Position numbers and translations under genes: made by a program. Positions 19,513-53,149 of a stretch of DNA of 60,536 bases are shown here, in pieces. Each line of letters begins with the position of its first letter. The first letter of the stretch is position 1. The DNA is from Corallochytrium limacisporum Hawaii (taxonomy: Eukaryota; Protista; Pluriformea): positions 1 to 60,536 of the forward strand of contig PDIP01000151.1 of NCBI GenBank assembly GCA_002811645.1, given 5' to 3'. The notes under the pieces were generated by a model, which worked only from the letters and a program-made list of their open reading frames with translations, was not told the DNA's origin and made no database searches.

Positions 19513-20167
19513 NNNNNNNNNNNNNNNNNNNNNNNNNNNNNNNNNNNNNNNNNNNNNNNNNNNNNNNNNNNNNNNNNNNNNNNNNNNNNNNNNNNNNNNN
19601 NNNNNNNNNNNNNNNNNNNNNNNNNNNNNNNNNNNNNNNNNNNNNNNNNNNNNNNNNNNNNNNNNNNNNNNNNNNNNNNNNNNNNNNNNNNNNNNNNNNN
19701 NNNNNNNNNNNNNNNNNNNNNNNNNNNNNNNNNNNNNNNNNNNNNNNNNNNNNNNNNNNNNNNNNNNNNNNNNNNNNNNNNNNNNNNNNNNNNNNNNNNN
19801 NNNNNNNNNNNNNNNNNNNNNNNNNNNNNNNNNNNNNNNNNNNNNNNNNNNNNNNNNNNNNNNNNNNNNNNNNNNNNNNNNNNNNNNNNNNNNNNNNNNN
19901 NNNNNNNNNNNNNNNNNNNNNNNNNNNNNNNNNNNNNNNNNNNNNNNNNNNNNNNNNNNNNNNNNNNNNNNNNNNNNNNNNNNNNNNNNNNNNNNNNNNN
20001 NNNNNNNNNNNNNNNNNNNNNNNNNNNNNNNNNNNNNNNNNNNNNNNNNNNNNNNNNNNNNNNNNNNNNNNNNNNNNNNNNNNNNNNNNNNNNNNNNNNN
20101 NNNNNNNNNNNNNNNNNNNNNNNNNNNNNNNNNNNNNNNNNNNNNNNNNNNNNNNNNNNNNNNNNNN
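19513..20167. other. Assembly gap (N run)
   Basis: Ns flanked by C-rich tracts. Confidence 0.99.
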
Positions 20168-41351: not shown

Positions 41352-41543
41352 NNNNNNNNNNNNNNNNNNNNNNNNNNNNNNNNNNNNNNNNNNNNNNNNN
41401 NNNNNNNNNNNNNNNNNNNNNNNNNNNNNNNNNNNNNNNNNNNNNNNNNNNNNNNNNNNNNNNNNNNNNNNNNNNNNNNNNNNNNNNNNNNNNNNNNNNN
41501 NNNNNNNNNNNNNNNNNNNNNNNNNNNNNNNNNNNNNNNNNNN
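41352..41543. other. Assembly gap (N run)
   Basis: Ns flanked by G tracts. Confidence 0.99.
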
Positions 41544-42518: not shown

Positions 42519-42816
42519 CACTCACTCACTCACTCACTCACTCACTCACTCACTCACTCACTCACTCACTCACTCACCCACTCACTCACTCACTCACTCA
42601 CTCACTCACTCACTCACTCACTCACTCACTCACTCACTCACNNNNNNNNNNNNNNNNNNNNNNNNNNNNNNNNNNNNNNNNNNNNNNNNNNNNNNNNNNN
42701 NNNNNNNNNCACTCACTCACTCACTCACTCACCCACTCACTCACTCACTCACTCACTCACTCACTCACTCACTCACTCACTCACTCACTCACTCACTCAC
42801 TCACTCACTCACTCAC
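42519..42816. repeat. (CACT)n tetranucleotide microsatellite, interrupted by an N gap at 42642-42709
   Basis: More than 50 visible CACT units with two CACC variants; true length unknown. Confidence 0.97.
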
Positions 42817-43758: not shown

Positions 43759-46700
43759 ATGGTTCCTTCTCCCAAAGGGTCGACGATGCAGAACCTCAGC
43801 GTGGATACGCTGCTGGACTGCATGAGCCTCTTATACAGGGAATGTGAGCGGTCAGATTTGCGTAGGGACCGCTATGCTGCTCTCTTCCTGGAGCAATACA
43901 AGGACACGGTCGCGGCAATGGAATCAATGCGAGTGACAAAGGCTGACTTCCAGGTTCTACAAACAATAGGACGTGGTGCTTTTGGTGAGGTTTGCGTTGT
44001 GAAGCATAAGAAGAGTGGTCGGATATACGCGATGAAAAGTTTGAACAAGTGGGACATGTTGAAGCGCAACGAAACCGCACACTTCAGAGAAGAGCGTGAT
44101 CTGATGGCTATCGGCAACGTCCGTCACATTACTACCCTCTACTACGCCTTCCAGGACGAGAATACGCTATATCTGGTTATGGAATACTACAGTGGTGGTG
44201 ACCTGCTAACTGTGCTGGACGTGCATGACAATTGTTTCGATGAAGACATGGCTCGGTTCTATACGGCAGAAATCATTGCGGCCGTTGAGAGCATCCACAT
44301 GTTGGGATATATCCATCGAGATTTGAAGCCAGACAACATTCTGTTGGACAACGAGGGGCACATTCGTATTGCAGACTTTGGTTCCTGTACCCAGGTGGAC
44401 GAGAAGGATGGCAAGGTCACATCCAAAATGGCAGTGGGCACGCCAGATTATCTGAGTCCGGAGGTCCTGAAAAGCATGGACAGCAACACTCGATACGGCA
44501 CGGAATGTGACTACTGGAGCATTGGCGTAATTCTGTACGAAATGACCGTCGGTGACTTGCCATTTTCCAGTGATATCCTTACTGAGATGTACGGTAATAT
44601 CCTGAACCACAAGGAAGCACTGGAGTTTCCGGATGATGTCAACCTGAGCCCTGAGTTGGTTGATCTCATAAAACGGCTCTTGTGTGATGAGGAAGAGCGG
44701 CTGGGCCTGAAGACCATGGACGAGCTGAAGGACCATCCATGGTTTAAACAGGGCCAGCGTCCCATTAATTGGGACACACTACTGGAGACAGAACCTCCCT
44801 ATGTGCCAAAGGTTAGTTCTCCAGATGACACCTCCAACTTTGACATTGAACAGGTCATGTCCATGGCTCCGCCGCCCACAGAACGGGGACCTGCAAACAC
44901 TGGAGCGTTTAGTGGTGCAAACTTACCCTTTGTTGGCTACAGTTTTACCAGACAAGCACGCATTCGCCTTAGCCAGAGTGGTGTCGTGGAGAGGATGCGC
45001 AGTGTGTACGATCTTGCAGGCAAGTCCCTGGCATCTTTGCCTGATTTCAAAGGCAGCAACGAAGTGTCGGCATCGGCCTTGAACTTGAACTCGATACGTG
45101 AAGATGAAGTCAATGCCCAGACACAACAGAACATAAATCTGGAGATTCACCACGTCCGGGAATCTGAACTCACGGCACGAATTGAGGAACTTGAGACTGC
45201 CCAACAGCAAGCAGAAAAGGACTCTGAAGCACTGCTCAAGGAACTTACCAGCATGACTCTCAAGTTTGAGAATGCGACTGTGCAGTATGATGCCAAGGTA
45301 GAAGCCAATGAACAGCTTGAGAGTGAAAAAGGCGCTGTAGAGCGATCCCTGCGAGGTGCAATGAATGAAATCAACGACCTTAAGGGAGACTTGGACACTA
45401 TCAAGCAGCGTCTGGAGGCTACAGAGAAGTCCAAGAAATCTGCGGTCAAGATCCAGCAGGATCTCGAAGAGACCATTTCCCGGCTTGAGCAACAAATTGA
45501 AAACAAGACATCACAGCTTAAGGAAGCCCAGAGTTCTTCTAAATCCGATGCTAGCGCTCCTTTGGGAGCTGTTGCGAGCACAGAACTGATCACCTTGCAG
45601 GAGCAGGTCAAGACTCTGAGGCGGAAGGCGGCAGACAGCAACAGAGAAGCTGAGACCCTGGCGGAAGACGTCCGCAAGGCTCGCGACGAGGTACGAGCGG
45701 AGAAGAAGGCTGCAAGGAGTGCCAAGCTGGAGCTGGAGAGTGTGCAAGCTGAACTTGACGATGAGCGCAAGCGCGTCAAGAAGCTGAAGGATGAGATTGT
45801 TGCCTTAGAGGAAGATGCTGCCACCACTGACGCTGGTGAGGCCACAGAGGACTTAAAGGCTGAGATTGAGAAGCTGAAGTCCAGGGCTGAAGAGACCGAA
45901 GATGAGTTGCACGAGGCGAGCCGCGATCGTGCCACCTTCAAGGCCTGCATTCTTGGGCTTATGTCTGGCTTTTCTGGTTCCACTAACGCCCTGACGACCA
46001 TCCTTGGGTCCACTGTGGAGCATGTGCCGGAAGTCGAGGAGGCATTCAAGGGCTGGCGGCCCAAGGAAGCCCCCACGTTAGTGGCAGCCATTGCTGCTGC
46101 GGACGCAGTTGAGTCTAACAAATTGCGTCACGCCCTGGCCGAATTGGAGATCAAGAACAAGACCCTCCAACGGGAGCTGAACAAGGTGAATTCTGAATTG
46201 AAGGAATCGGTCGGACGTGTCAACACCTTGATGAGTACTCGGGTGGGAAGCGTTCGGGTCAAAAATCGCCTGCTGCGTGGCAACTCCGCCGTTTACCGGT
46301 CTCACAAGAAACCGATGTCCAAATACAAGGGCACCGGTTCTGTGGACAATATCATGGGTATTATGAAAAAGGACGAGGAAGAACACGAAGAGAACGAAGC
46401 GCGTCCCACCGACACCGAAACTGCCACTGTCAAACGCCGCGGTACGGACTTTAAGCGCCGTCGCGAAAAGGTGCACCAGCAAGAACTTATTGCCCTTAAG
46501 GCCGACCTAGAAAATCAGTTGAAGGCCAAGGCAGACCTGGAGGATCTGAACCGCGACATGCGGGAAGAGCTACAGGGTCTGAAGGACGAAGTCCACAACC
46601 TTGGTTTGCTTCTTGAAAAGGAACGTCTTGAGAACGAGCGTCTGAACAGTAGTATGGCCGTGCCCGTAGACACTGGTTCCGGTGAAGATATCATGGTAGT

Positions 46701-49059
46701 GGGCGGCCCCACTCTGCACAGCGTGGCCGATCTCGTCGACCGTGCATCTGTTGCTAACCTGCTGGACACTATCGAAGACGAAGAGGAGCCCGTTGCTGTC
46801 ATAGAAGCAGGTCAGAGCCAGCAAGAGATTCTCGTCCCGCAGTCCCAAGGAGTTTCACCTACCGGCTCCACTGACAATGTCCATTTGAGCCCCGCTGATG
46901 CCAGTTCTATCCTTGTCAACGGTGGGTCGTGCAGCGAGAGTTGGAACGTATTGTCAAATGGCACTACTTCCTCTGGGGATTTCCAGAACCAGAACACGCG
47001 CCGTAGCAAGAGTGCCGTTGCCGCCACCCCTCCCTCTGGAAGTAGCGTCAATGCTACTACTGAGGTCCGGATCAGCCTTGTGGAGGCTTCCGAAGTGGAA
47101 TCTTTCCAGCGCGCTATGGCTGGAGGTTTCCCGGTGGTAGATTTCGAGGAAGTACCCGCTGTTGAGGGTCATAAGTTCCGCCATGTTGCGTTGTCCATGC
47201 CTAAGGCCTGCCTGGTGTGCAATCAAATCATCCTCGGTGCTGTTCGACAGAGTGTGCGGTGCATAGACTGTGGCTTCCGTGCCCACCCAGAGTGTCTTTC
47301 GCATGCCACCAACACGGAGCCTTTCGTCTGCGATCCGGAGGCTGTCAAGGCCCGTAAGGGCCAAGGATTGGTTGTACTGGAGCGCACAATGAGTGCTTTG
47401 GTGAAGGAACGCGGCATGTCCCCTCTATTGCACTGCACGCTAACCTATGTGATCAGCGAGAAAGATGCAGGCGACAGTTTGCTGGCAGACTGTAACGTCA
47501 TTCTAACAGACCGTTACCTTTTGGTGCTCTCTCCGAGCCACAGTGGTAACTTCCTGCGCGTTTTGCGCTGCATTGACCTGGCGATGCCCAATGTCCGCCT
47601 CCGCTCGGCCGTTGAGGGAGAGGTTCCTTCAATTGACAAATGGTTCGTCATTGAAACCGGTGGTGGCGACTTAACGCAGGCCGTCGTGATGATGGCACCC
47701 ACCGCAGACGTTCGTAGTACCTTTACGAGTACCCTTCAGTCACTCATCCAACGCGTGACCGCCTTTGAGCTTGTGAGCAAAGAGTCTGCCAGTGCTCTAG
47801 ATGAGATGCGTGCGACCCCGAGCACACTGACAATGGCGCCGCAGATCCGACGTCTGAAACTTTCGTGGTTCGGTCTACCATTCCAACACAAGGGACTGCC
47901 TCGCTTCGTTGTCGGTGGAACTGCTGTGGCGACATCTCCGGTCTCCTCAACCGAAGAGGCTGCCCCTGTGGTGTACGGCGTGCACATGCACAAACAAACG
48001 GCAATTCTGGTCGCTAGCAACGGTATGTTTGCTGTGTCCACCACAGAACGACGCAGCCGCATGCGCAAGATTGTGGACAAGCACATGAGCTACTTTGCCG
48101 TCTGTACCAATGCAGTGACTGACAAGGAAGGCCAGTTCCAAAAACCGACACATCTGATGGCCACACGCACGGAGAAGACAGGTCACGTCCGTATCTTCAA
48201 TCTTGACGCTACTCTCCAGGCTACCGCCCTGGATAAGGCCTTAAAGACCGGCGTCAGTGTCAACGCCCTTTCGGGCACTTCCAAACCTCTGAACTGTGCT
48301 TTCTTCGGACTCATGTCCGCCGCTGTGGCGGTGGAGAAACCCAAGATTGGTGGCCTGCTGCGGAAGTCCACCATCAGGTACACGCGTTCAAGTCCCACTC
48401 GTCCTGCTGCCACTCCCAACAGTACCAGTCCACAGGACGAGTGGGTTTTGTATGCTGTGCAAGGCGACAAGCTATCCGTGATCCACTCAGGAACTGGAAA
48501 ACTGATCCGTCAACACACCATCCCGCCGTCCCAGCTTCCGGAGTCCGCAATTGCCGGTCGGGCCATTGACAAGCGTACAATCGTCCTGCGGGACGCCACC
48601 CGCGGTGTAGTATTCCACCTTGCGGATAATGGGCGTACCAATGCGCTCGTGGCAGCCGACCAGGATCCTTCGCTGAGCATGTTCGCCAACAACGTGAGCA
48701 TGCCCATCGTTGACGTTGTAGGATTAGACCACGGGGAGATTCTTGTTGCCTACACAGGTCTCGGTGTGGTAGTCAATGCACGCAATGGTCGCCGCGCCTC
48801 TGCAACGGAATTCCACTGGACCGCTCGCCCACTGGCTGTTACGATCGAGAGCTTCACGGGTGACGACACTCGTTTGGAACCGGACCGTGTTGTGATTTGC
48901 TACACTCAATCTCACATTGCTGTTCACGACCTGCAGACAGGCGCACTGCGTCAAATCTTGGACTTGGGCAACCCGGCGGCTGCCATGGCCGCTTCGCTTT
49001 CCTTCACAACCACCATGCGCGGCAGCAAGGCCTACGCCAGTTTGCTCTCTCTTGCATGA
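43759..49059 (+). CDS. MRCK/DMPK-family AGC kinase (kinase, coiled coil, DMPK coil, C1, PH, CNH)
   Basis: LSVDTLLD cap, IGRGAFGEV, YAMKSLNKWDMLKR..AHFREERD, HRDLKPDN, AVGTPDYLSPE and LPFVGYSFT hydrophobic motif; long coiled coil; C1 HKF..C..C...C..C...H..C; PH-like and CNH-like regions. Confidence 0.92.
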   Translation: MVPSPKGSTMQNLSVDTLLDCMSLLYRECERSDLRRDRYAALFLEQYKDTVAAMESMRVTKADFQVLQTIGRGAFGEVCVVKHKKSGRIYAMKSLNKWDMLKRNETAHFREERDLMAIGNVRHITTLYYAFQDENTLYLVMEYYSGGDLLTVLDVHDNCFDEDMARFYTAEIIAAVESIHMLGYIHRDLKPDNILLDNEGHIRIADFGSCTQVDEKDGKVTSKMAVGTPDYLSPEVLKSMDSNTRYGTECDYWSIGVILYEMTVGDLPFSSDILTEMYGNILNHKEALEFPDDVNLSPELVDLIKRLLCDEEERLGLKTMDELKDHPWFKQGQRPINWDTLLETEPPYVPKVSSPDDTSNFDIEQVMSMAPPPTERGPANTGAFSGANLPFVGYSFTRQARIRLSQSGVVERMRSVYDLAGKSLASLPDFKGSNEVSASALNLNSIREDEVNAQTQQNINLEIHHVRESELTARIEELETAQQQAEKDSEALLKELTSMTLKFENATVQYDAKVEANEQLESEKGAVERSLRGAMNEINDLKGDLDTIKQRLEATEKSKKSAVKIQQDLEETISRLEQQIENKTSQLKEAQSSSKSDASAPLGAVASTELITLQEQVKTLRRKAADSNREAETLAEDVRKARDEVRAEKKAARSAKLELESVQAELDDERKRVKKLKDEIVALEEDAATTDAGEATEDLKAEIEKLKSRAEETEDELHEASRDRATFKACILGLMSGFSGSTNALTTILGSTVEHVPEVEEAFKGWRPKEAPTLVAAIAAADAVESNKLRHALAELEIKNKTLQRELNKVNSELKESVGRVNTLMSTRVGSVRVKNRLLRGNSAVYRSHKKPMSKYKGTGSVDNIMGIMKKDEEEHEENEARPTDTETATVKRRGTDFKRRREKVHQQELIALKADLENQLKAKADLEDLNRDMREELQGLKDEVHNLGLLLEKERLENERLNSSMAVPVDTGSGEDIMVVGGPTLHSVADLVDRASVANLLDTIEDEEEPVAVIEAGQSQQEILVPQSQGVSPTGSTDNVHLSPADASSILVNGGSCSESWNVLSNGTTSSGDFQNQNTRRSKSAVAATPPSGSSVNATTEVRISLVEASEVESFQRAMAGGFPVVDFEEVPAVEGHKFRHVALSMPKACLVCNQIILGAVRQSVRCIDCGFRAHPECLSHATNTEPFVCDPEAVKARKGQGLVVLERTMSALVKERGMSPLLHCTLTYVISEKDAGDSLLADCNVILTDRYLLVLSPSHSGNFLRVLRCIDLAMPNVRLRSAVEGEVPSIDKWFVIETGGGDLTQAVVMMAPTADVRSTFTSTLQSLIQRVTAFELVSKESASALDEMRATPSTLTMAPQIRRLKLSWFGLPFQHKGLPRFVVGGTAVATSPVSSTEEAAPVVYGVHMHKQTAILVASNGMFAVSTTERRSRMRKIVDKHMSYFAVCTNAVTDKEGQFQKPTHLMATRTEKTGHVRIFNLDATLQATALDKALKTGVSVNALSGTSKPLNCAFFGLMSAAVAVEKPKIGGLLRKSTIRYTRSSPTRPAATPNSTSPQDEWVLYAVQGDKLSVIHSGTGKLIRQHTIPPSQLPESAIAGRAIDKRTIVLRDATRGVVFHLADNGRTNALVAADQDPSLSMFANNVSMPIVDVVGLDHGEILVAYTGLGVVVNARNGRRASATEFHWTARPLAVTIESFTGDDTRLEPDRVVICYTQSHIAVHDLQTGALRQILDLGNPAAAMAASLSFTTTMRGSKAYASLLSLA

Positions 49060-49157: not shown

Positions 49158-52100
49158 CTATCCTGTACCTCTCAGTCGATCCGGTTCCCTGTCCCGCTCC
49201 TTGTGGCTGCCGGAATGTCGCCGCCTGGCCCTTTCTTCTGAGCTGACAATAATGTCCGTCCTCCCTGTACCGCCCAACACATCTGGACCGCCCGCCTGCC
49301 ACGAATTCCGGCCCGAGGGCCTGACCGGAATCTGACCGAGGACAACGCGATTATAAATAGCCTTCGTGTTGTGATTGTGCCGCTGAGCATCCAGTAGCTG
49401 ATAGGTGGCGTAAACGTGATTAAAGGTCCGTTGCCGGATGCTACGGATAGCCAACTTGCGGGGAATGCCAAGGCGAGCCATGTCGAAGAGTATGTCGTCA
49501 TCAATTAGATCGGCGTTGGCTGTGTCCGGAGTAAGGGCTTCGGACACCCACGGTTGCTGTACCAAGTCCGCGATCGTAAGCCTCGCACTGCGTTCGTTTG
49601 CGAGCAGGCCATTCAACAACATCACGACCGGAAGCGGCCACGAGAAGTTGTCGCCGTCCTGCAGGTAGACGGGCAAAGCAGGGTCCGACACGCTGCCGCC
49701 ATTGCTTGCGGGGGTGCCACGACCGCTACTGGTGGGCGTGACGGTGTTGGGCGTGCCCGACTTGCTGCCACCAGTCGGTGTACCTGGGATGGGACGTAGC
49801 CCAGGGATGGCCTCAGTGCTCCGCGACTGCGGACTGTGGATGTTGATTGAGCCCATGAGCTTGCCTTTGTGTTGCAAGATGTCCTGTACGCTGCCAAACG
49901 GAAACTTACCGCGCAATAACAGATACAGCATGACTCCGAGTGCCCACATGTCCACCTCTGGTCCAACATTTGTGTTCCCCTTGATGATTTCGGGAGCCAT
50001 ATACGGCACAGATCCACAGGGACCCACATCGTAACCGTCTTCATGTCTAGCTTGCATTGTGGAAAATCCGAAATCAAACACCTTTATCGTGTTGGTACCT
50101 CGCTCCACCAGGCAATTGTCAAGCTTGAGATCGCGATGGACAATGCCACGATTGTGCATGTACCGCACGGCGCTCACAATGCCTCCGAAATAGTACTGCG
50201 CTTGCTCCTCCGAAAGGCCTCCAATGGGTCCACCTTCATTTCCCTCCGCTGCCGCAAGCATCTTATTATGATGCACCTGCTCACTCACGAATTCCAAGAG
50301 TGTCTTGCCCGGGATATATTCACAGACCAGGAACAGTCTTTCTGGTCGGCTGATAATCTCACAGAGCTGTACAATGTTGACATGCTTCAATACTTTCCAG
50401 ATCCGCAGCTCGTCGTGAATGTGGGCCGCATTGCGCACATTGGTATCGATTATCTTGATGGCCACATTGCGTCGCGTTGATCGATGTTTTGCCTTAAGGA
50501 CTGCACCATAGGTCCCGGCCCCGATAATGGACATAACCTGATAATTGCCAATGTAATCCCCGACTCCACTCAGGTTCCGAAGCAGGGTCTCGGAACTGTG
50601 GTGGTCGGGTCCTGTCGATTGCGAGCTATACGAGCCGCCTGAGTCCTCCATGTACCGATCGTGCATACGATCGCGGTGGTGGTGGCTGCCAAGGTGGTGA
50701 TGCCGAGTATGCCCACTATGATGGTGATGGTGATGATGACGCAGGTGGTGATTGTGACCGGGCTGGGTGAGGTGGCTGTGACTGTGGGAACGACCAGTCC
50801 GACTTGGAGATCTGTTGCTCCGATCAATGAGACGAAAGTGGCCTTGAAAGTGTTGCTTCAGGCTGCGCTGCAGCCGCATAATATACAGTTTGGAATCATC
50901 ATGCTTCACCTGATCTATATTGCACTTGAAGCGGATCGAGGTGCCATCTGAGTGGAGCGTATCCAAATCCACAGATCCGTGTTCAGGCAGATAGTTGAGG
51001 TGCTTAACCTGGGGGAACACATCACTAATGTTTCTGCCAAGGTACTCCGTTGACTTTTGTTCCAGACCCAGTAAGAAGCTTGTGAGATGATTGTAGGAGC
51101 GGATAATTCCTTTCTCATCAAAGCTAATCACGCCCTGAATCTCATTCCTGCCCACGTCCCGAATCTCGGCCATAAAAACTCTTTCCTTATTGCTAAGTGT
51201 CTTCTCCACTACCAGTAGGGATATGGGAATGATGTGTCCCGTCCGTGTCTTTGCCTCCATAGCGCGAGGCTTACCGATGACCTTACTCTCGCCGGTTTCC
51301 AGGTACTTTTCAATGTACTTTTGGTGCTGAAATTTGTGCTGGATTGGCATGATGATACTCAGAGGTTGTCCGATCATTTCCTCACTTGTGTAGCAGAAGA
51401 TCTCACAGGTGACTTCATTGACACCGAGGATCTTTCCGTCCGTGCCTGCAACGATCTTGCCGAAGTCCTCTACGATTGGTTCCACTGTCGCATAAAAGTT
51501 AACATCACCATCCGTTCGGACGTCGCTCACAGTGAGACGCACTGTGATCAATGTGCCTGAACTATGTACGGCCTCTACTTGACGACTTTGTCCAATAATG
51601 TGGGTTTTGCCCGTCTCCATATACTGATCGATAAAGTGCTGATGTACCGCACGGTACGGTTCCGGCATTAGCATTTCCACATTCTTGCCAATCATTTCTT
51701 GGGGTGTGTACCCAAATATTTCAGCGCAAACCTCATCAACCATATGGATCTGCGAGTCCGGGCCCATGGTCAGGAACCCAGTCTTACAATCGAAGGCGTT
51801 TACCCGTTTGTTCGCTGCGCGATGCTTCCTCATATTTCGCAATGACTTCTGGTTATCAGCCCGTTTGGTACTCGCAACCGAGTGTTGCCGCATAGATTTG
51901 TCCAGATATGGTAGTCCATTCCTCACAGGTGAGTGCATTCCGGCCGGAGCCTTCCAACCTGTCCGCTTACGCTCCAATTCGGGGGTGAGGGTGAGTTTCA
52001 TATTTGCCATTTCCGCAGTCATCTCCAGCGCCGGATCAGCGCTGTGGGGTGAAGTCAGGGGCTTTCGCGCTGGCATCTGTTTATTGGGTCGCTTTTCTGT

Positions 52101-52274
52101 ATCACTATCATACGATTTCTCCCTAATAACTGTACGCAGTCCATCATAGCCATCAACTGAATGCGAGTCGAGATCAATGGGTGCTTCAATGTGCTGTACC
52201 GATCCCAGCTGCTGGGCCATCGCTTTGGCCTCTTTCTCCGCCCGCGTACTCTGCGGGTGGTTTTCTTCAGTCAT
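49158..52274 (-). CDS. PAS-PAS-PAS / His-rich / AMPK-MARK-family Ser/Thr kinase / UBA protein
   Basis: First ATG at 52274 (acaccATG). Two FixL-like PAS domains and a third degenerate one; kinase motifs IGAGTYG, VAIK, HRDLKLDN, DFG, CGSVPYMAPE, GPEVDMWALGV; UBA-like DDDILFDMARLG...HVYATYQLL. Confidence 0.9.
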   Translation of the reverse strand: MTEENHPQSTRAEKEAKAMAQQLGSVQHIEAPIDLDSHSVDGYDGLRTVIREKSYDSDTEKRPNKQMPARKPLTSPHSADPALEMTAEMANMKLTLTPELERKRTGWKAPAGMHSPVRNGLPYLDKSMRQHSVASTKRADNQKSLRNMRKHRAANKRVNAFDCKTGFLTMGPDSQIHMVDEVCAEIFGYTPQEMIGKNVEMLMPEPYRAVHQHFIDQYMETGKTHIIGQSRQVEAVHSSGTLITVRLTVSDVRTDGDVNFYATVEPIVEDFGKIVAGTDGKILGVNEVTCEIFCYTSEEMIGQPLSIIMPIQHKFQHQKYIEKYLETGESKVIGKPRAMEAKTRTGHIIPISLLVVEKTLSNKERVFMAEIRDVGRNEIQGVISFDEKGIIRSYNHLTSFLLGLEQKSTEYLGRNISDVFPQVKHLNYLPEHGSVDLDTLHSDGTSIRFKCNIDQVKHDDSKLYIMRLQRSLKQHFQGHFRLIDRSNRSPSRTGRSHSHSHLTQPGHNHHLRHHHHHHHSGHTRHHHLGSHHHRDRMHDRYMEDSGGSYSSQSTGPDHHSSETLLRNLSGVGDYIGNYQVMSIIGAGTYGAVLKAKHRSTRRNVAIKIIDTNVRNAAHIHDELRIWKVLKHVNIVQLCEIISRPERLFLVCEYIPGKTLLEFVSEQVHHNKMLAAAEGNEGGPIGGLSEEQAQYYFGGIVSAVRYMHNRGIVHRDLKLDNCLVERGTNTIKVFDFGFSTMQARHEDGYDVGPCGSVPYMAPEIIKGNTNVGPEVDMWALGVMLYLLLRGKFPFGSVQDILQHKGKLMGSINIHSPQSRSTEAIPGLRPIPGTPTGGSKSGTPNTVTPTSSGRGTPASNGGSVSDPALPVYLQDGDNFSWPLPVVMLLNGLLANERSARLTIADLVQQPWVSEALTPDTANADLIDDDILFDMARLGIPRKLAIRSIRQRTFNHVYATYQLLDAQRHNHNTKAIYNRVVLGQIPVRPSGRNSWQAGGPDVLGGTGRTDIIVSSEERARRRHSGSHKERDREPDRLRGTG

Positions 52275-52958
52275 GGTGTTCGAATCAACAGACCCGCAGC
52301 ATGTGTGGTCCACGACCAATTCCGCCGCTTGTGTACACGGCAATATACAGAGTCCCTATTCGAATCTCATCGTCCTCTATTTATGTCACCTCCTACGGAG
52401 CGCTATATTCTTACGATTCCACCGTCTTCTGGGATCTCAGAGATTCATCTCCAAGCTGATCACGTCACACGCTTTGCGGCTATTAGGACACGTTGTGTAC
52501 CTTCATCTGATCTACACGATGCATAACGGCATGAGTCCAATTCTTTACTTGGATTTGCATGGCCGCATTTGCCGTTCTGCGGCCGTAGCAAACCCCCATC
52601 CCCGCCCTTCACTGGCTCTCTCCCCTTTGCCTCTCGCTCTCCCTCTCTCTCTCTCTCTGTCTATGCCAGCCACTCCCTCACGCCGTGAATTTCCTTTGGG
52701 TTTGCTGCCAGTGTGTGCGGTCAGGGGACCTCCTCAGTTCCGCGGGGCTGGACAGTGTAAATGGCCCCGTGAGACCCGCAAGACCAACGAAGGAAAAAAA
52801 CCCAAAGGGAGCGAGAGCAAGAAGAAGAAGAAATAAGGAAAAAGGGAGTGACGCAGGAGAAAAAAGGCACCCCACTGCCGCCGCCCCCTCCACTTTTCTC
52901 TCTTTTGGTCCTCGGGAGAAAAACTATGAAAGCCGGGGGTTGGGGGGGGGGGCGAAAG

Positions 52959-53149
52959 NNNNNNNNNNNNNNNNNNNNNNNNNNNNNNNNNNNNNNNNNN
53001 NNNNNNNNNNNNNNNNNNNNNNNNNNNNNNNNNNNNNNNNNNNNNNNNNNNNNNNNNNNNNNNNNNNNNNNNNNNNNNNNNNNNNNNNNNNNNNNNNNNN
53101 NNNNNNNNNNNNNNNNNNNNNNNNNNNNNNNNNNNNNNNNNNNNNNNNN
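52959..53149. other. Assembly gap (N run)
   Basis: Ns flanked by G tracts. Confidence 0.99.

What the first reader, a model, noticed from the sequence alone, without database searches (positions are those of the whole stretch)
49158..52274. Tandem FixL-type heme-PAS domains fused to an AMPK/MARK-family kinase: candidate O2/NO/CO-gated Ser/Thr kinase
Seen: PAS1 (IFGYTPQEMIGKNVEMLMPEPYRAVHQHFIDQYMETGKTHIIGQSRQV; His codon 51642-51644) and PAS2 (IGQPLSIIMPIQHKFQHQKYIEKYLETGESKVIGKPR) both follow the rhizobial FixL heme-PAS pattern IGQNVNILMPEP...H..YI.RY......HIIG.GR. Both keep the proximal His and the distal FG-loop Arg. The output is not a His kinase but a CAMK-group kinase with a MARK/AMPK-related UBA helix. 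Established: FixL PAS binds heme and senses O2, and animal PASK has PAS domains but is not known to have this UBA or FixL heme signature. Inference: a bacterial-type gas sensor wired directly to a eukaryotic energy/polarity kinase.
Basis: partly seen in the sequence, partly recalled or inferred. Interest (0 to 1): 0.8.

Follow-up and report, generated by a model that had tools for sequence, protein, structure and literature searches.

The report
Heme-type PAS sensor kinase, PASK paralogue
A single-celled relative of animals (Corallochytrium) encodes a protein kinase whose sensor half keeps the heme-binding residues of the bacterial oxygen sensor FixL; it belongs to a widespread but untested protist family that looks like a heme-retaining sister of the animal nutrient kinase PASK.

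Summary
Window 49158-52274 (-) is one intact, intronless 1038-codon gene. It has a disordered N-terminus, two FixL/DosP-type PAS domains, a third short non-heme PAS, a His-rich linker, a catalytically complete CAMKL kinase and a UBA-like helix bundle. Both heme-type PAS domains keep the proximal His, the O2-contacting Arg and the distal hydrophobic residues.

- The genome is Corallochytrium limacisporum. It has a separate true PASK orthologue and a compact paralogue of this gene, which this scan already reported (s1-567852).
- About 35 cluster representatives share the architecture. They come from Holozoa, Apusomonada, Amoebozoa and the basal streptophytes Mesostigma and Chlorokybus. Xing et al. 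2023 listed some of them as "PASK" with heme-cluster PAS domains.
- The three-PAS sensor aligns in register with PASK PAS-A/B/C (hhalign E 3e-38). The best kinase tree found joins the family with PASK.

So this is a heme-ligand-retaining paralogue of PASK, not a bacterial sensor newly attached to a MARK or AMPK kinase.

The window copy is the divergent one: long branch, Gly in place of the activation-loop Thr, and two low-complexity inserts.

Heme binding and gas regulation are untested in any family member. I obtained no expression data.

The parts
49158..52274 (-). Complete intronless CDS (1038 codons plus stop) of the heme-type PAS CAMKL kinase. The open frame extends upstream to 52343, but the first ATG is at 52274.
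51780..52274 (-). N-terminal region of about 165 residues with no domain match. It has a basic stretch just before PAS1 and is absent from the compact paralogue.
51468..51779 (-). PAS1 (aa 189-292 of the 1061-aa frame), FixL-type. Proximal His H234 is at 51642-51644 and the Arg equivalent to BjFixL R220 (R254) is at 51582-51584. The R206 equivalent is Gln.
51141..51461 (-). PAS2 (aa 295-401), FixL-type. It is 36% identical to the RmFixL heme domain. His H340 is at 51324-51326 and Arg R360 at 51264-51266. The R206 equivalent is Lys.
50814..51134 (-). PAS3 (about aa 404-510), a short non-heme PAS with no long F-alpha helix and no His/Arg pair. It carries the H-x-D-G-S/T 'PAC' motif (H464) shared with PASK PAS-C.
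   Evidence: PMC11962487
50589..50792 (-). His-rich low-complexity linker (aa 518-585; 23 His in 68 residues), absent from the paralogue and from the family consensus.
49545..50543 (-). CAMKL protein kinase domain (aa 601-933). VAIK Lys, alpha-C Glu, HRDLKxxN, DFG and APE are all present. There is a roughly 16-residue hinge insert and a 61-residue Ser/Thr/Pro/Gly-rich C-lobe insert (49689-49871).
49989..50075 (-). Activation segment, DFG to APE. The Thr conserved in 25 of 32 family members (the LKB1-type site of MARK/AMPK) is Gly here, and the loop is 2 residues longer.
49374..49505 (-). UBA-like domain directly after the kinase. It is weak against Pfam UBA_SIK3, but the motif is conserved in about 22 of 32 family members.

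Best explanation
The gene encodes a soluble sensor Ser/Thr kinase of a eukaryotic family built as [heme-type PAS]-[heme-type PAS]-[short PAS-C-like PAS]-[CAMKL kinase]-[UBA]. The family is a paralogue or sister of PASK that has kept the FixL heme ligands. Shown: the architecture, the conserved ligand residues, the FixL-like fold, an intact catalytic core, sensor homology in register with PASK, and a separate PASK orthologue in the same genome. Inferred mechanism: PAS1 and PAS2 each bind one b-type heme through the F-alpha His (H234, H340). Binding of O2, or of CO or NO, to the ferrous iron would draw the G-beta Arg (R254, R360) into the pocket and shift the FG loop, as in FixL. That change would pass through the PAS2-PAS3 stack to the kinase, as PAS-A and PAS-C contacts control the activation loop in PASK. 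Kinase activity would then report oxygen tension or redox state directly by phosphorylating proteins. The direction of the switch cannot be told from sequence. The window copy is the fast-evolving paralogue. It has lost the activation-loop Thr, so it is probably independent of an upstream LKB1-type kinase and leans more on its own sensor. It has also gained a His-rich linker and two disordered inserts.
For: Domain calls and FixL/DosP matches. Residue census: 33 of 35 family proteins keep the His+Arg pair in at least one PAS and 20 keep it in two or more, whereas the same genome's PASK has Tyr and Lys at those positions. Structure: pLDDT 89.9, and 0.9 A rmsd to the RmFixL heme domain. Catalytic motifs are intact and best match MARK/SIK/Snf1. 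Paralogue of the same architecture on G000:C2 = Clim_evm1s2. True PASK on G000:C11. hhalign of the sensor module against PASK N-termini: probability 100, E 3.4e-38, 250 columns covering PAS1, PAS2 and the first half of PAS3. A shared H-[KR]-D-G-S motif lies upstream of the kinase in both families (PMC11962487). The constrained tree joining the family and PASK is 8.3 lnL better than the free search, p-AU 0.74. Retention of the ligands across Holozoa, Apusomonada, Amoebozoa and basal streptophytes argues for selection on heme binding.
Against: No member of the family has been shown to bind heme or to respond to a gas; I found no such paper. The BjFixL R206 equivalent, which contacts a heme propionate and matters for signalling in FixL, is Gln in PAS1 and Lys in PAS2. 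The kinase-domain backbone of CAMKL is unresolved, and the window kinase sits on a long branch (1.72), so its exact placement is unsure. The AU tests reject neither 'sister to PASK' (p 0.125) nor 'all heme-PAS kinases are one clade' (p 0.18). The clade tested was named after trees had been seen. Long inserts and the lost T-loop Thr could mean relaxed constraint.
Confidence: 0.6

Rival explanations
1. The PAS domains descend from heme-PAS domains but no longer bind heme. Like PASK PAS-A, they would bind a small metabolite or serve only as autoinhibitory or dimerisation modules, making the protein a nutrient- or metabolite-regulated kinase.
For: The sensor module is homologous to that of PASK, whose PAS-A lacks the heme His and binds non-heme ligands (PMC10468136). 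The R206 equivalent is lost in PAS1. Some family members have lost the His in PAS2.
Against: Both the His and the Arg are kept in both domains here and in most of the family across very deep divergences, while the true PASK of the same genome has replaced both. The distal hydrophobic residues are also kept.
Confidence: 0.2
2. The domains bind heme, but the signal is heme availability or cellular redox state (the Fe(II)/Fe(III) switch) rather than a diatomic gas. This would be analogous in logic to the heme-regulated eIF2-alpha kinase.
For: The sequence cannot distinguish these signals. The replaced R206 equivalent could weaken heme retention. The His-rich linker could bind metal or heme. This is inference; no tool result speaks to it directly.
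Against: The O2-contacting Arg (FixL R220, DosP R97) is the most conserved residue after the His (nearly invariant in alignments A2 and A4). That fits ligand discrimination at the iron.
Confidence: 0.12
3. The window copy is a decaying or non-catalytic duplicate. In this reading only the compact paralogue on contig C2 carries the family's function.
For: It has the longest terminal branch in the tree (1.72 against a median of 0.51). It has lost the T-loop Thr, carries a 61-residue low-complexity insert in the C-lobe and a poly-His linker, and was not found by exact look-up in the public gene collection.
Against: The 1061-codon frame has no stop. Every catalytic motif and all four heme-ligand residues are intact.
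Confidence: 0.08

Closest known systems
FixL (Bradyrhizobium japonicum / Sinorhizobium meliloti) heme-PAS oxygen sensor
   Same: Both PAS domains match at the sequence level (NF041777 1.3e-30; PDB 1D06 6e-17). The fold agrees at 0.9 A. The proximal His, the Arg that contacts bound O2 and the distal Ile/Leu/Val are kept.
   Different: The output is a eukaryotic Ser/Thr kinase, not a HisKA/HATPase histidine kinase. There are two tandem heme-type domains rather than one. The R206 equivalent is replaced. Heme binding is untested.
E. coli DosP (heme-PAS c-di-GMP phosphodiesterase)
   Same: It is the top Foldseek match for the tandem PAS unit and a strong sequence match. The Arg97 equivalent is kept.
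   Different: There is no Met95-type distal ligand; the position is Gln or Lys. The output domain differs.
PASK / yeast Psk1-Psk2 (PAS domain-containing Ser/Thr kinase)
   Same: Three PAS domains sit N-terminal to a CAMKL kinase and align in register (hhalign E 3.4e-38). The H-x-D-G PAC motif lies ahead of the kinase. The kinase tree is compatible with, and slightly prefers, a common clade.
   Different: It is not the orthologue: the genome has its own PASK, and the PASK clade (100/98) excludes this gene. PASK lacks the heme His/Arg (Tyr/Lys in the Corallochytrium PASK) and has no UBA. The long linker that splits PASK PAS-C is not seen here.
Protist 'PASK' entries in Xing et al. 2023: Acanthamoeba XP_004333348.1 and XP_004338484.1, Thecamonas XP_013758639.1
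   Same: Same family. The Thecamonas protein is my P0195. [quoted passage not shown]
   Different: The paper treats them as PASK and does not discuss retention of the ligands, the UBA, or coexistence with a true PASK. The window gene is a more divergent copy with inserts and no T-loop Thr.
MARK/SIK/AMPK-related kinases (CAMKL)
   Same: These are the best PDB matches of the kinase domain (2e-41). The kinase-then-UBA arrangement is shared.
   Different: There is no KA1, AID or adenylate-sensor domain, and no LKB1-site Thr. The gene lies outside the AMPK and core KA1 clades of the same genome.
Chlamydomonas FXL proteins (FixL-like heme-PAS proteins reported to bind heme and O2; from my own memory of Murthy et al. 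2012, not found in the searchable library)
   Same: They would be a precedent for FixL-type heme-PAS domains working in a eukaryote.
   Different: As I recall, they are not fused to a Ser/Thr kinase. I did not check this here.

Membership tests
FixL/DosP-type heme-PAS domain (Xing et al. cluster 3) | PAS fold with significant similarity to FixL/DosP heme domains | tested here: met
   NCBIfam FixL 1.3e-30 and DosP 9.5e-18. The PDB hits are FixL/DosP except for one weaker multi-sensor histidine kinase. AF2 pLDDT 89.9, and 0.9 A to 1D06.
FixL/DosP-type heme-PAS domain (Xing et al. cluster 3) | Proximal His on the F-alpha helix | tested here: met
   H234 (PAS1) and H340 (PAS2) align with BjFixL H200 / RmFixL H194. 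The His is invariant in the 49-row alignment A2.
FixL/DosP-type heme-PAS domain (Xing et al. cluster 3) | G-beta Arg that hydrogen-bonds bound O2 (BjFixL R220 / DosP R97), plus the distal hydrophobic residues | tested here: met
   R254 and R360 are present. I215/I216/L236/I238 are matched by I-I-L-V and V-I-L-V.
FixL/DosP-type heme-PAS domain (Xing et al. cluster 3) | Propionate-contacting Arg (BjFixL R206 / RmFixL R200) | tested here: not met
   Gln in PAS1 and Lys in PAS2. The paralogue keeps Arg in PAS1.
FixL/DosP-type heme-PAS domain (Xing et al. cluster 3) | Actual heme binding and reversible O2/CO/NO binding | not testable with these tools
   This needs spectroscopy on purified protein.
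FixL protein (two-component sensor) | HisKA/HATPase_c histidine kinase output | tested here: not met
   The output is Pkinase (PF00069, 1.3e-55), and no HisKA or HATPase match was found.
PASK orthologue group | Kinase domain inside the PASK clade, with PASK as best hit | tested here: not met
   The PASK clade (100/98) contains the C11 gene but not this one. The best PDB hits are MARK, not 3DLS, whereas the C11 gene hits 3DLS at 3.1e-102. The AU test for 'this gene plus PASK as one clade' gives p 0.125, so a sister position is not excluded.
PASK orthologue group | Three N-terminal PAS domains (A, B, C) ahead of the kinase | tested here: met
   hhalign A4 against A5: probability 100, E 3.4e-38, in register over PAS1, PAS2 and the first half of PAS3.
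MARK / AMPK-related kinases | Kinase followed by a UBA domain | tested here: inconclusive
   UBA_SIK3 E 2.7e-4, 21.3 bits, below the 27-bit cut-off. The motif is conserved in about 22 of 32 family members, and 7 of 32 match Pfam.
MARK / AMPK-related kinases | C-terminal KA1 domain (MARK), or AID plus adenylate sensor (AMPK alpha) | tested here: not met
   None is found here, while seven KA1 paralogues and two AMPK-alpha paralogues of the same genome have them.
MARK / AMPK-related kinases | Activation-loop Thr phosphorylated by LKB1-type kinases | tested here: not met
   It is Gly at that position, against Thr in 25 of 32 family members and in MARK.

The most novel reading that the evidence does not exclude
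This family is a direct, heme-based oxygen or gas sensor that signals by Ser/Thr phosphorylation in unicellular eukaryotes. It would represent the ancestral, heme-bound state from which the animal and fungal nutrient kinase PASK arose by loss of the cofactor. Corallochytrium, which keeps a true PASK next to two heme-type paralogues, would then preserve both states side by side. The window copy would be a variant that has become independent of upstream T-loop kinases.
Probability: 0.4. Interest if true: 0.8.

Novelty: new variant of a known kind. Interest (0 to 1): 0.55.

Why it matters
The established eukaryotic O2 sensors work through oxygen-dependent hydroxylases: PHD/HIF in animals and Skp1 prolyl hydroxylase in amoebae. 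If the family binds heme, it would be a different and much faster route, a FixL-style iron sensor driving a eukaryotic kinase cascade. It occurs in lineages that move between oxic and hypoxic sediments, including amoebae, apusomonads and close relatives of animals.

It would also bear on what PASK's orphan PAS domains originally sensed. The family offers compact, intronless, soluble proteins for testing how a PAS signal reaches a eukaryotic kinase domain; the 753-aa paralogue is the easier target.

What tempers this is that the architecture is already tabulated in a 2023 survey, this scan has already flagged the paralogue, and nothing is shown biochemically.

Tried and rejected
1. Single-sequence AlphaFold2 of PAS1-PAS2 gave pLDDT 44 and was unusable. 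It was replaced by a run on a 49-row alignment.

2. The word-index search with the window protein found almost only bacterial PAS proteins and generic kinases. The one eukaryotic sensor relative was Nk52_evm22s1400. The family appeared only in the exhaustive profile search.

3. I considered 'ordinary PASK orthologue' and rejected it, because a separate orthologue exists.

4. I considered 'member of MARK or AMPK proper' and rejected it on domain content and tree position.

5. I considered bacterial contamination and rejected it. The gene lies between eukaryotic genes on a 60-kb scaffold, 98 bp from a convergent MRCK-like kinase gene, and its output domain is a eukaryotic CAMKL kinase.

6. The kinase-only phylogeny could not resolve the CAMKL backbone. 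Three AU tests were all non-rejecting, so placement rests mainly on the shared sensor module.

9. Literature searches for an experimentally studied eukaryotic heme-PAS Ser/Thr kinase found none. Searches for the Chlamydomonas FXL paper also found nothing.
Full report
**What is in the sequence**

The minus strand of the window carries one uninterrupted frame from 52343 to 49158. Residue numbers below refer to the 1061-aa frame that starts at 52343.

Pfam finds two strong PAS matches, a protein kinase domain at 601-933 (1.3e-55) and a weak UBA_SIK3 match at 951-984 (E 2.7e-4, below the gathering score). NCBIfam's rhizobial FixL model matches in two stretches at 1.3e-30, and DosP matches at 9.5e-18.

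The gene lies 98 bp from the stop codon of a convergent 1766-aa MRCK-like kinase gene. Other eukaryotic genes lie around it, so contamination is not an issue.

**Are the PAS domains of the heme type?**

- *Sequence.* Searched against every PDB sequence, residues 180-420 gave 14 hits. Thirteen are FixL or DosP heme-PAS sequences; the last and weakest (3.5e-6) is a multi-sensor histidine kinase. RmFixL 1D06 matches PAS2 at 6e-17, and BjFixL matches PAS1 at 1e-12.
- *Ligand residues in PAS1.* In the printed alignments H234 aligns with BjFixL His200, H-I-I with His214/Ile215/Ile216, R254 with Arg220, and L/V with Leu236/Ile238.
- *Ligand residues in PAS2.* H340 aligns with the proximal His, K-V-I with His214/Ile215/Ile216, R360 with Arg220, and L/V with Leu236/Ile238.
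- *The one departure.* The propionate-binding Arg206 is Gln in PAS1 and Lys in PAS2.
- *Structure.* A single-sequence AlphaFold run failed (pLDDT 44). A run on a 49-row alignment of relatives gave pLDDT 89.9 with two canonical PAS folds. Foldseek against the PDB ranks DosP and the tandem FixL PAS domains first. The model superposes on the RmFixL heme domain at 0.9 A over 104 columns with 36% identity.
- *PAS3.* A third PAS (about 404-510) is shorter. It lacks the long F-alpha helix and the His/Arg pair, but has a conserved H-x-D-G-S/T motif.

**The kinase**

All catalytic motifs are present. The best PDB matches are MARK1-4 (2e-41), then SIK3, Snf1, MELK and AMPK; PASK is not in the top 60.

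The window copy has three peculiarities:
- Gly replaces the activation-loop Thr, which 25 of 32 relatives and MARK keep.
- It carries a hinge insert and a 61-residue Ser/Thr/Pro/Gly-rich insert in the C-lobe.
- A 68-residue linker with 23 His sits between PAS3 and the kinase.

The segment after the kinase has the M..G...S/L...N(Q)..ATY.LL pattern of CAMKL UBA domains. That pattern is conserved in about 22 of 32 relatives, and 7 of 32 reach Pfam UBA_SIK3 at E 0.01 or better.

**The genome and its paralogues**

The assembly is 24.1 Mb in 286 contigs. A paralogue on contig C2 is identical to the EukProt entry Clim_evm1s2, which identifies the organism as Corallochytrium limacisporum.

That paralogue is 761 aa by ORF and 753 aa as annotated. 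It has the same architecture in compact form, keeps the T-loop Thr, and is 36% identical overall. This scan had already reported it (s1-567852).

A third PAS-kinase gene, on contig C11 (Clim_evm84s11), is the true PASK orthologue. It hits the human PASK kinase structure 3DLS at 3.1e-102, against 2e-51 for the next hit. It is about 60% identical to animal PASK kinase domains. At the heme His and Arg positions it has Tyr and Lys.

**Relatives elsewhere**

An exhaustive profile search of 1.84 billion cluster representatives, with local domain scans, gives about 35 proteins of 530-1110 aa with the same layout.

Named sources:
- Pigoraptor chileana
- Thecamonas trahens (XP_013758639.1, annotated 'CAMK/CAMKL')
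- Balamuthia mandrillaris (KAL6057916.1, annotated 'MARK2')
- Stygamoeba (two members), Vermistella and Cavostelium
- Tieghemostelium lacteum (KYR01871.1)
- Mesostigma viride (three members) and Chlorokybus atmophyticus

The rest come from metagenomes. Thirty-three of the 35 keep the His+Arg pair in at least one PAS, and 20 keep it in two or more.

The family is not new to the literature as an architecture. [quoted passage not shown] They state that PASK-PAS domains from Acanthamoeba, Thecamonas and Capsaspora fall in cluster 3 and take this as a sign of origin from bacterial heme-PAS domains.

I found no paper that tests heme binding or gas regulation of any member. The Acanthamoeba genome paper discusses oxygen sensing without mentioning them.

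**Relationship to PASK**

A profile of the family's sensor region (A4) aligns with a profile of PASK N-termini (A5) at probability 100 and E 3.4e-38 over 250 columns. PAS1, PAS2 and the first half of PAS3 are in register with PASK PAS-A, PAS-B and the N-terminal half of PAS-C.

Both families have the H-[KR]-D-G-S motif of the PAS-C 'PAC' half upstream of the kinase. This is the motif that the 2025 PASK study identifies as H/R-R-D-G (PMC11962487).

I built a 70-row kinase-domain tree (246 columns, LG+C20):
- It recovers PASK at 100/98, AMPK at 100/100 and the core KA1/MARK group at 100/99. All three exclude the window gene.
- It leaves the CAMKL backbone open.
- The window kinase has the longest branch (1.72). 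Its nearest row by path is its paralogue.

The AU tests reject none of the groupings tried:

| Grouping held together | lnL relative to the free-search tree | p-AU |
|---|---|---|
| Window gene + PASK | 19.2 lower | 0.125 |
| All heme-type kinases | 7.2 lower | 0.18 |
| Whole family + PASK | 8.3 higher | 0.74 |

The last group was defined after I had seen trees, and non-rejection is not proof. Even so, the shared three-PAS module plus a compatible kinase tree make one ancestral PAS-PAS-PAS-kinase gene the most economical reading. PASK would be the branch that lost the heme ligands.

**How it probably works**

Shown: the fold, the ligands, the intact kinase and the homology to PASK's sensor.

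Inferred:
- Each of PAS1 and PAS2 holds a b-type heme on the F-alpha His.
- O2, or CO or NO, binding to ferrous iron recruits the G-beta Arg and moves the FG loop, as in FixL.
- The change reaches the kinase through PAS-PAS and PAS-kinase contacts like those that PASK uses to stabilise its activation loop (PMC11962487).

The sign of the response is unknown. The window copy's missing T-loop Thr suggests regulation by its own sensor alone.

Rivals:
- A cofactor-less metabolite sensor like PASK.
- A heme-availability or redox sensor.
- A decaying duplicate.

The pattern of conservation speaks against the first and third, but only biochemistry can settle the matter.

**Limits**

I could not confirm that the gene is annotated in public protein sets. 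The Chlamydomonas FXL precedent is from my memory only.

**Verdict**

The gene is a divergent member of an uncharacterised family that has already been tabulated: heme-type PAS CAMKL kinases related to PASK. This scan also saw the family in the same genome on other DNA. Interest is moderate (0.55). It would rise sharply if heme-dependent gas regulation were shown.

Noticed in passing
G000:C11 = L005:5363-8311 (+): This is the true PASK orthologue of the same genome (Clim_evm84s11, 982 aa). It hits 3DLS at 3.1e-102, has non-heme PAS domains (Tyr/Lys at the FixL His/Arg positions) and has no UBA.
   Followed up: yes
G000:C2 = L004:1552-3837 (+): This is a compact paralogue (Clim_evm1s2) with the same heme-PAS x2 + PAS3 + kinase + UBA layout. 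It keeps the T-loop Thr and the PAS1 R206 equivalent. The scan already reported it as s1-567852.
   Followed up: yes
P0001 (EukProt Nk52_evm22s1400, 1211 aa): This protein, under a source label I take to be an ichthyosporean, has a long coiled-coil N-terminus followed by five tandem FixL-signature PAS domains and no kinase or other output domain.
   Followed up: partly
P0122-P0158 and others; L036:6001-16248: Dozens of 2000-3600-aa proteins carry 8-13 tandem FixL-signature PAS repeats and no kinase. One sits on a eukaryote-like contig (neighbours UEV/RING and an amino-acid permease) and has an N-terminal TPR_TmcB region. Their organism and function are unknown.
   Followed up: partly
P0152, P0160, P0398 (Mesostigma viride); P0399 (Chlorokybus atmophyticus): Basal streptophyte algae carry members of the same kinase family. 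They are 42-44% identical to the Corallochytrium paralogue over the whole sensor region, which is closer than most amoebozoan members. This could be vertical descent or eukaryote-to-eukaryote transfer.
   Followed up: no
G000 loci L007-L011, L015, L017; L013, L014: Corallochytrium has seven KA1-domain (MARK-like) kinase paralogues and two AMPK-alpha paralogues, which is a sizeable CAMKL expansion for a 24-Mb genome.
   Followed up: partly
G000:C194 = L032:709-2478 (+): This 590-aa protein has a kinase domain that groups with the PASK clade (100/99), but its N-terminus is disordered and has no detectable PAS. It may be a PAS-less PASK-like paralogue.
   Followed up: partly
window 43759-49059 (+): A 1766-aa MRCK/DMPK-like kinase gene is convergent with the PAS kinase gene. 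Only 98 bp separate the two stop codons, so the 3' ends must be very short or must overlap.
   Followed up: no
window 52959-53149: A 191-base run of N (an assembly gap) lies about 690 bp upstream of the start codon, so the promoter region of this gene is incompletely assembled. Other gaps are at 19513-20167, 41352-41543 and 42642-42709.
   Followed up: no
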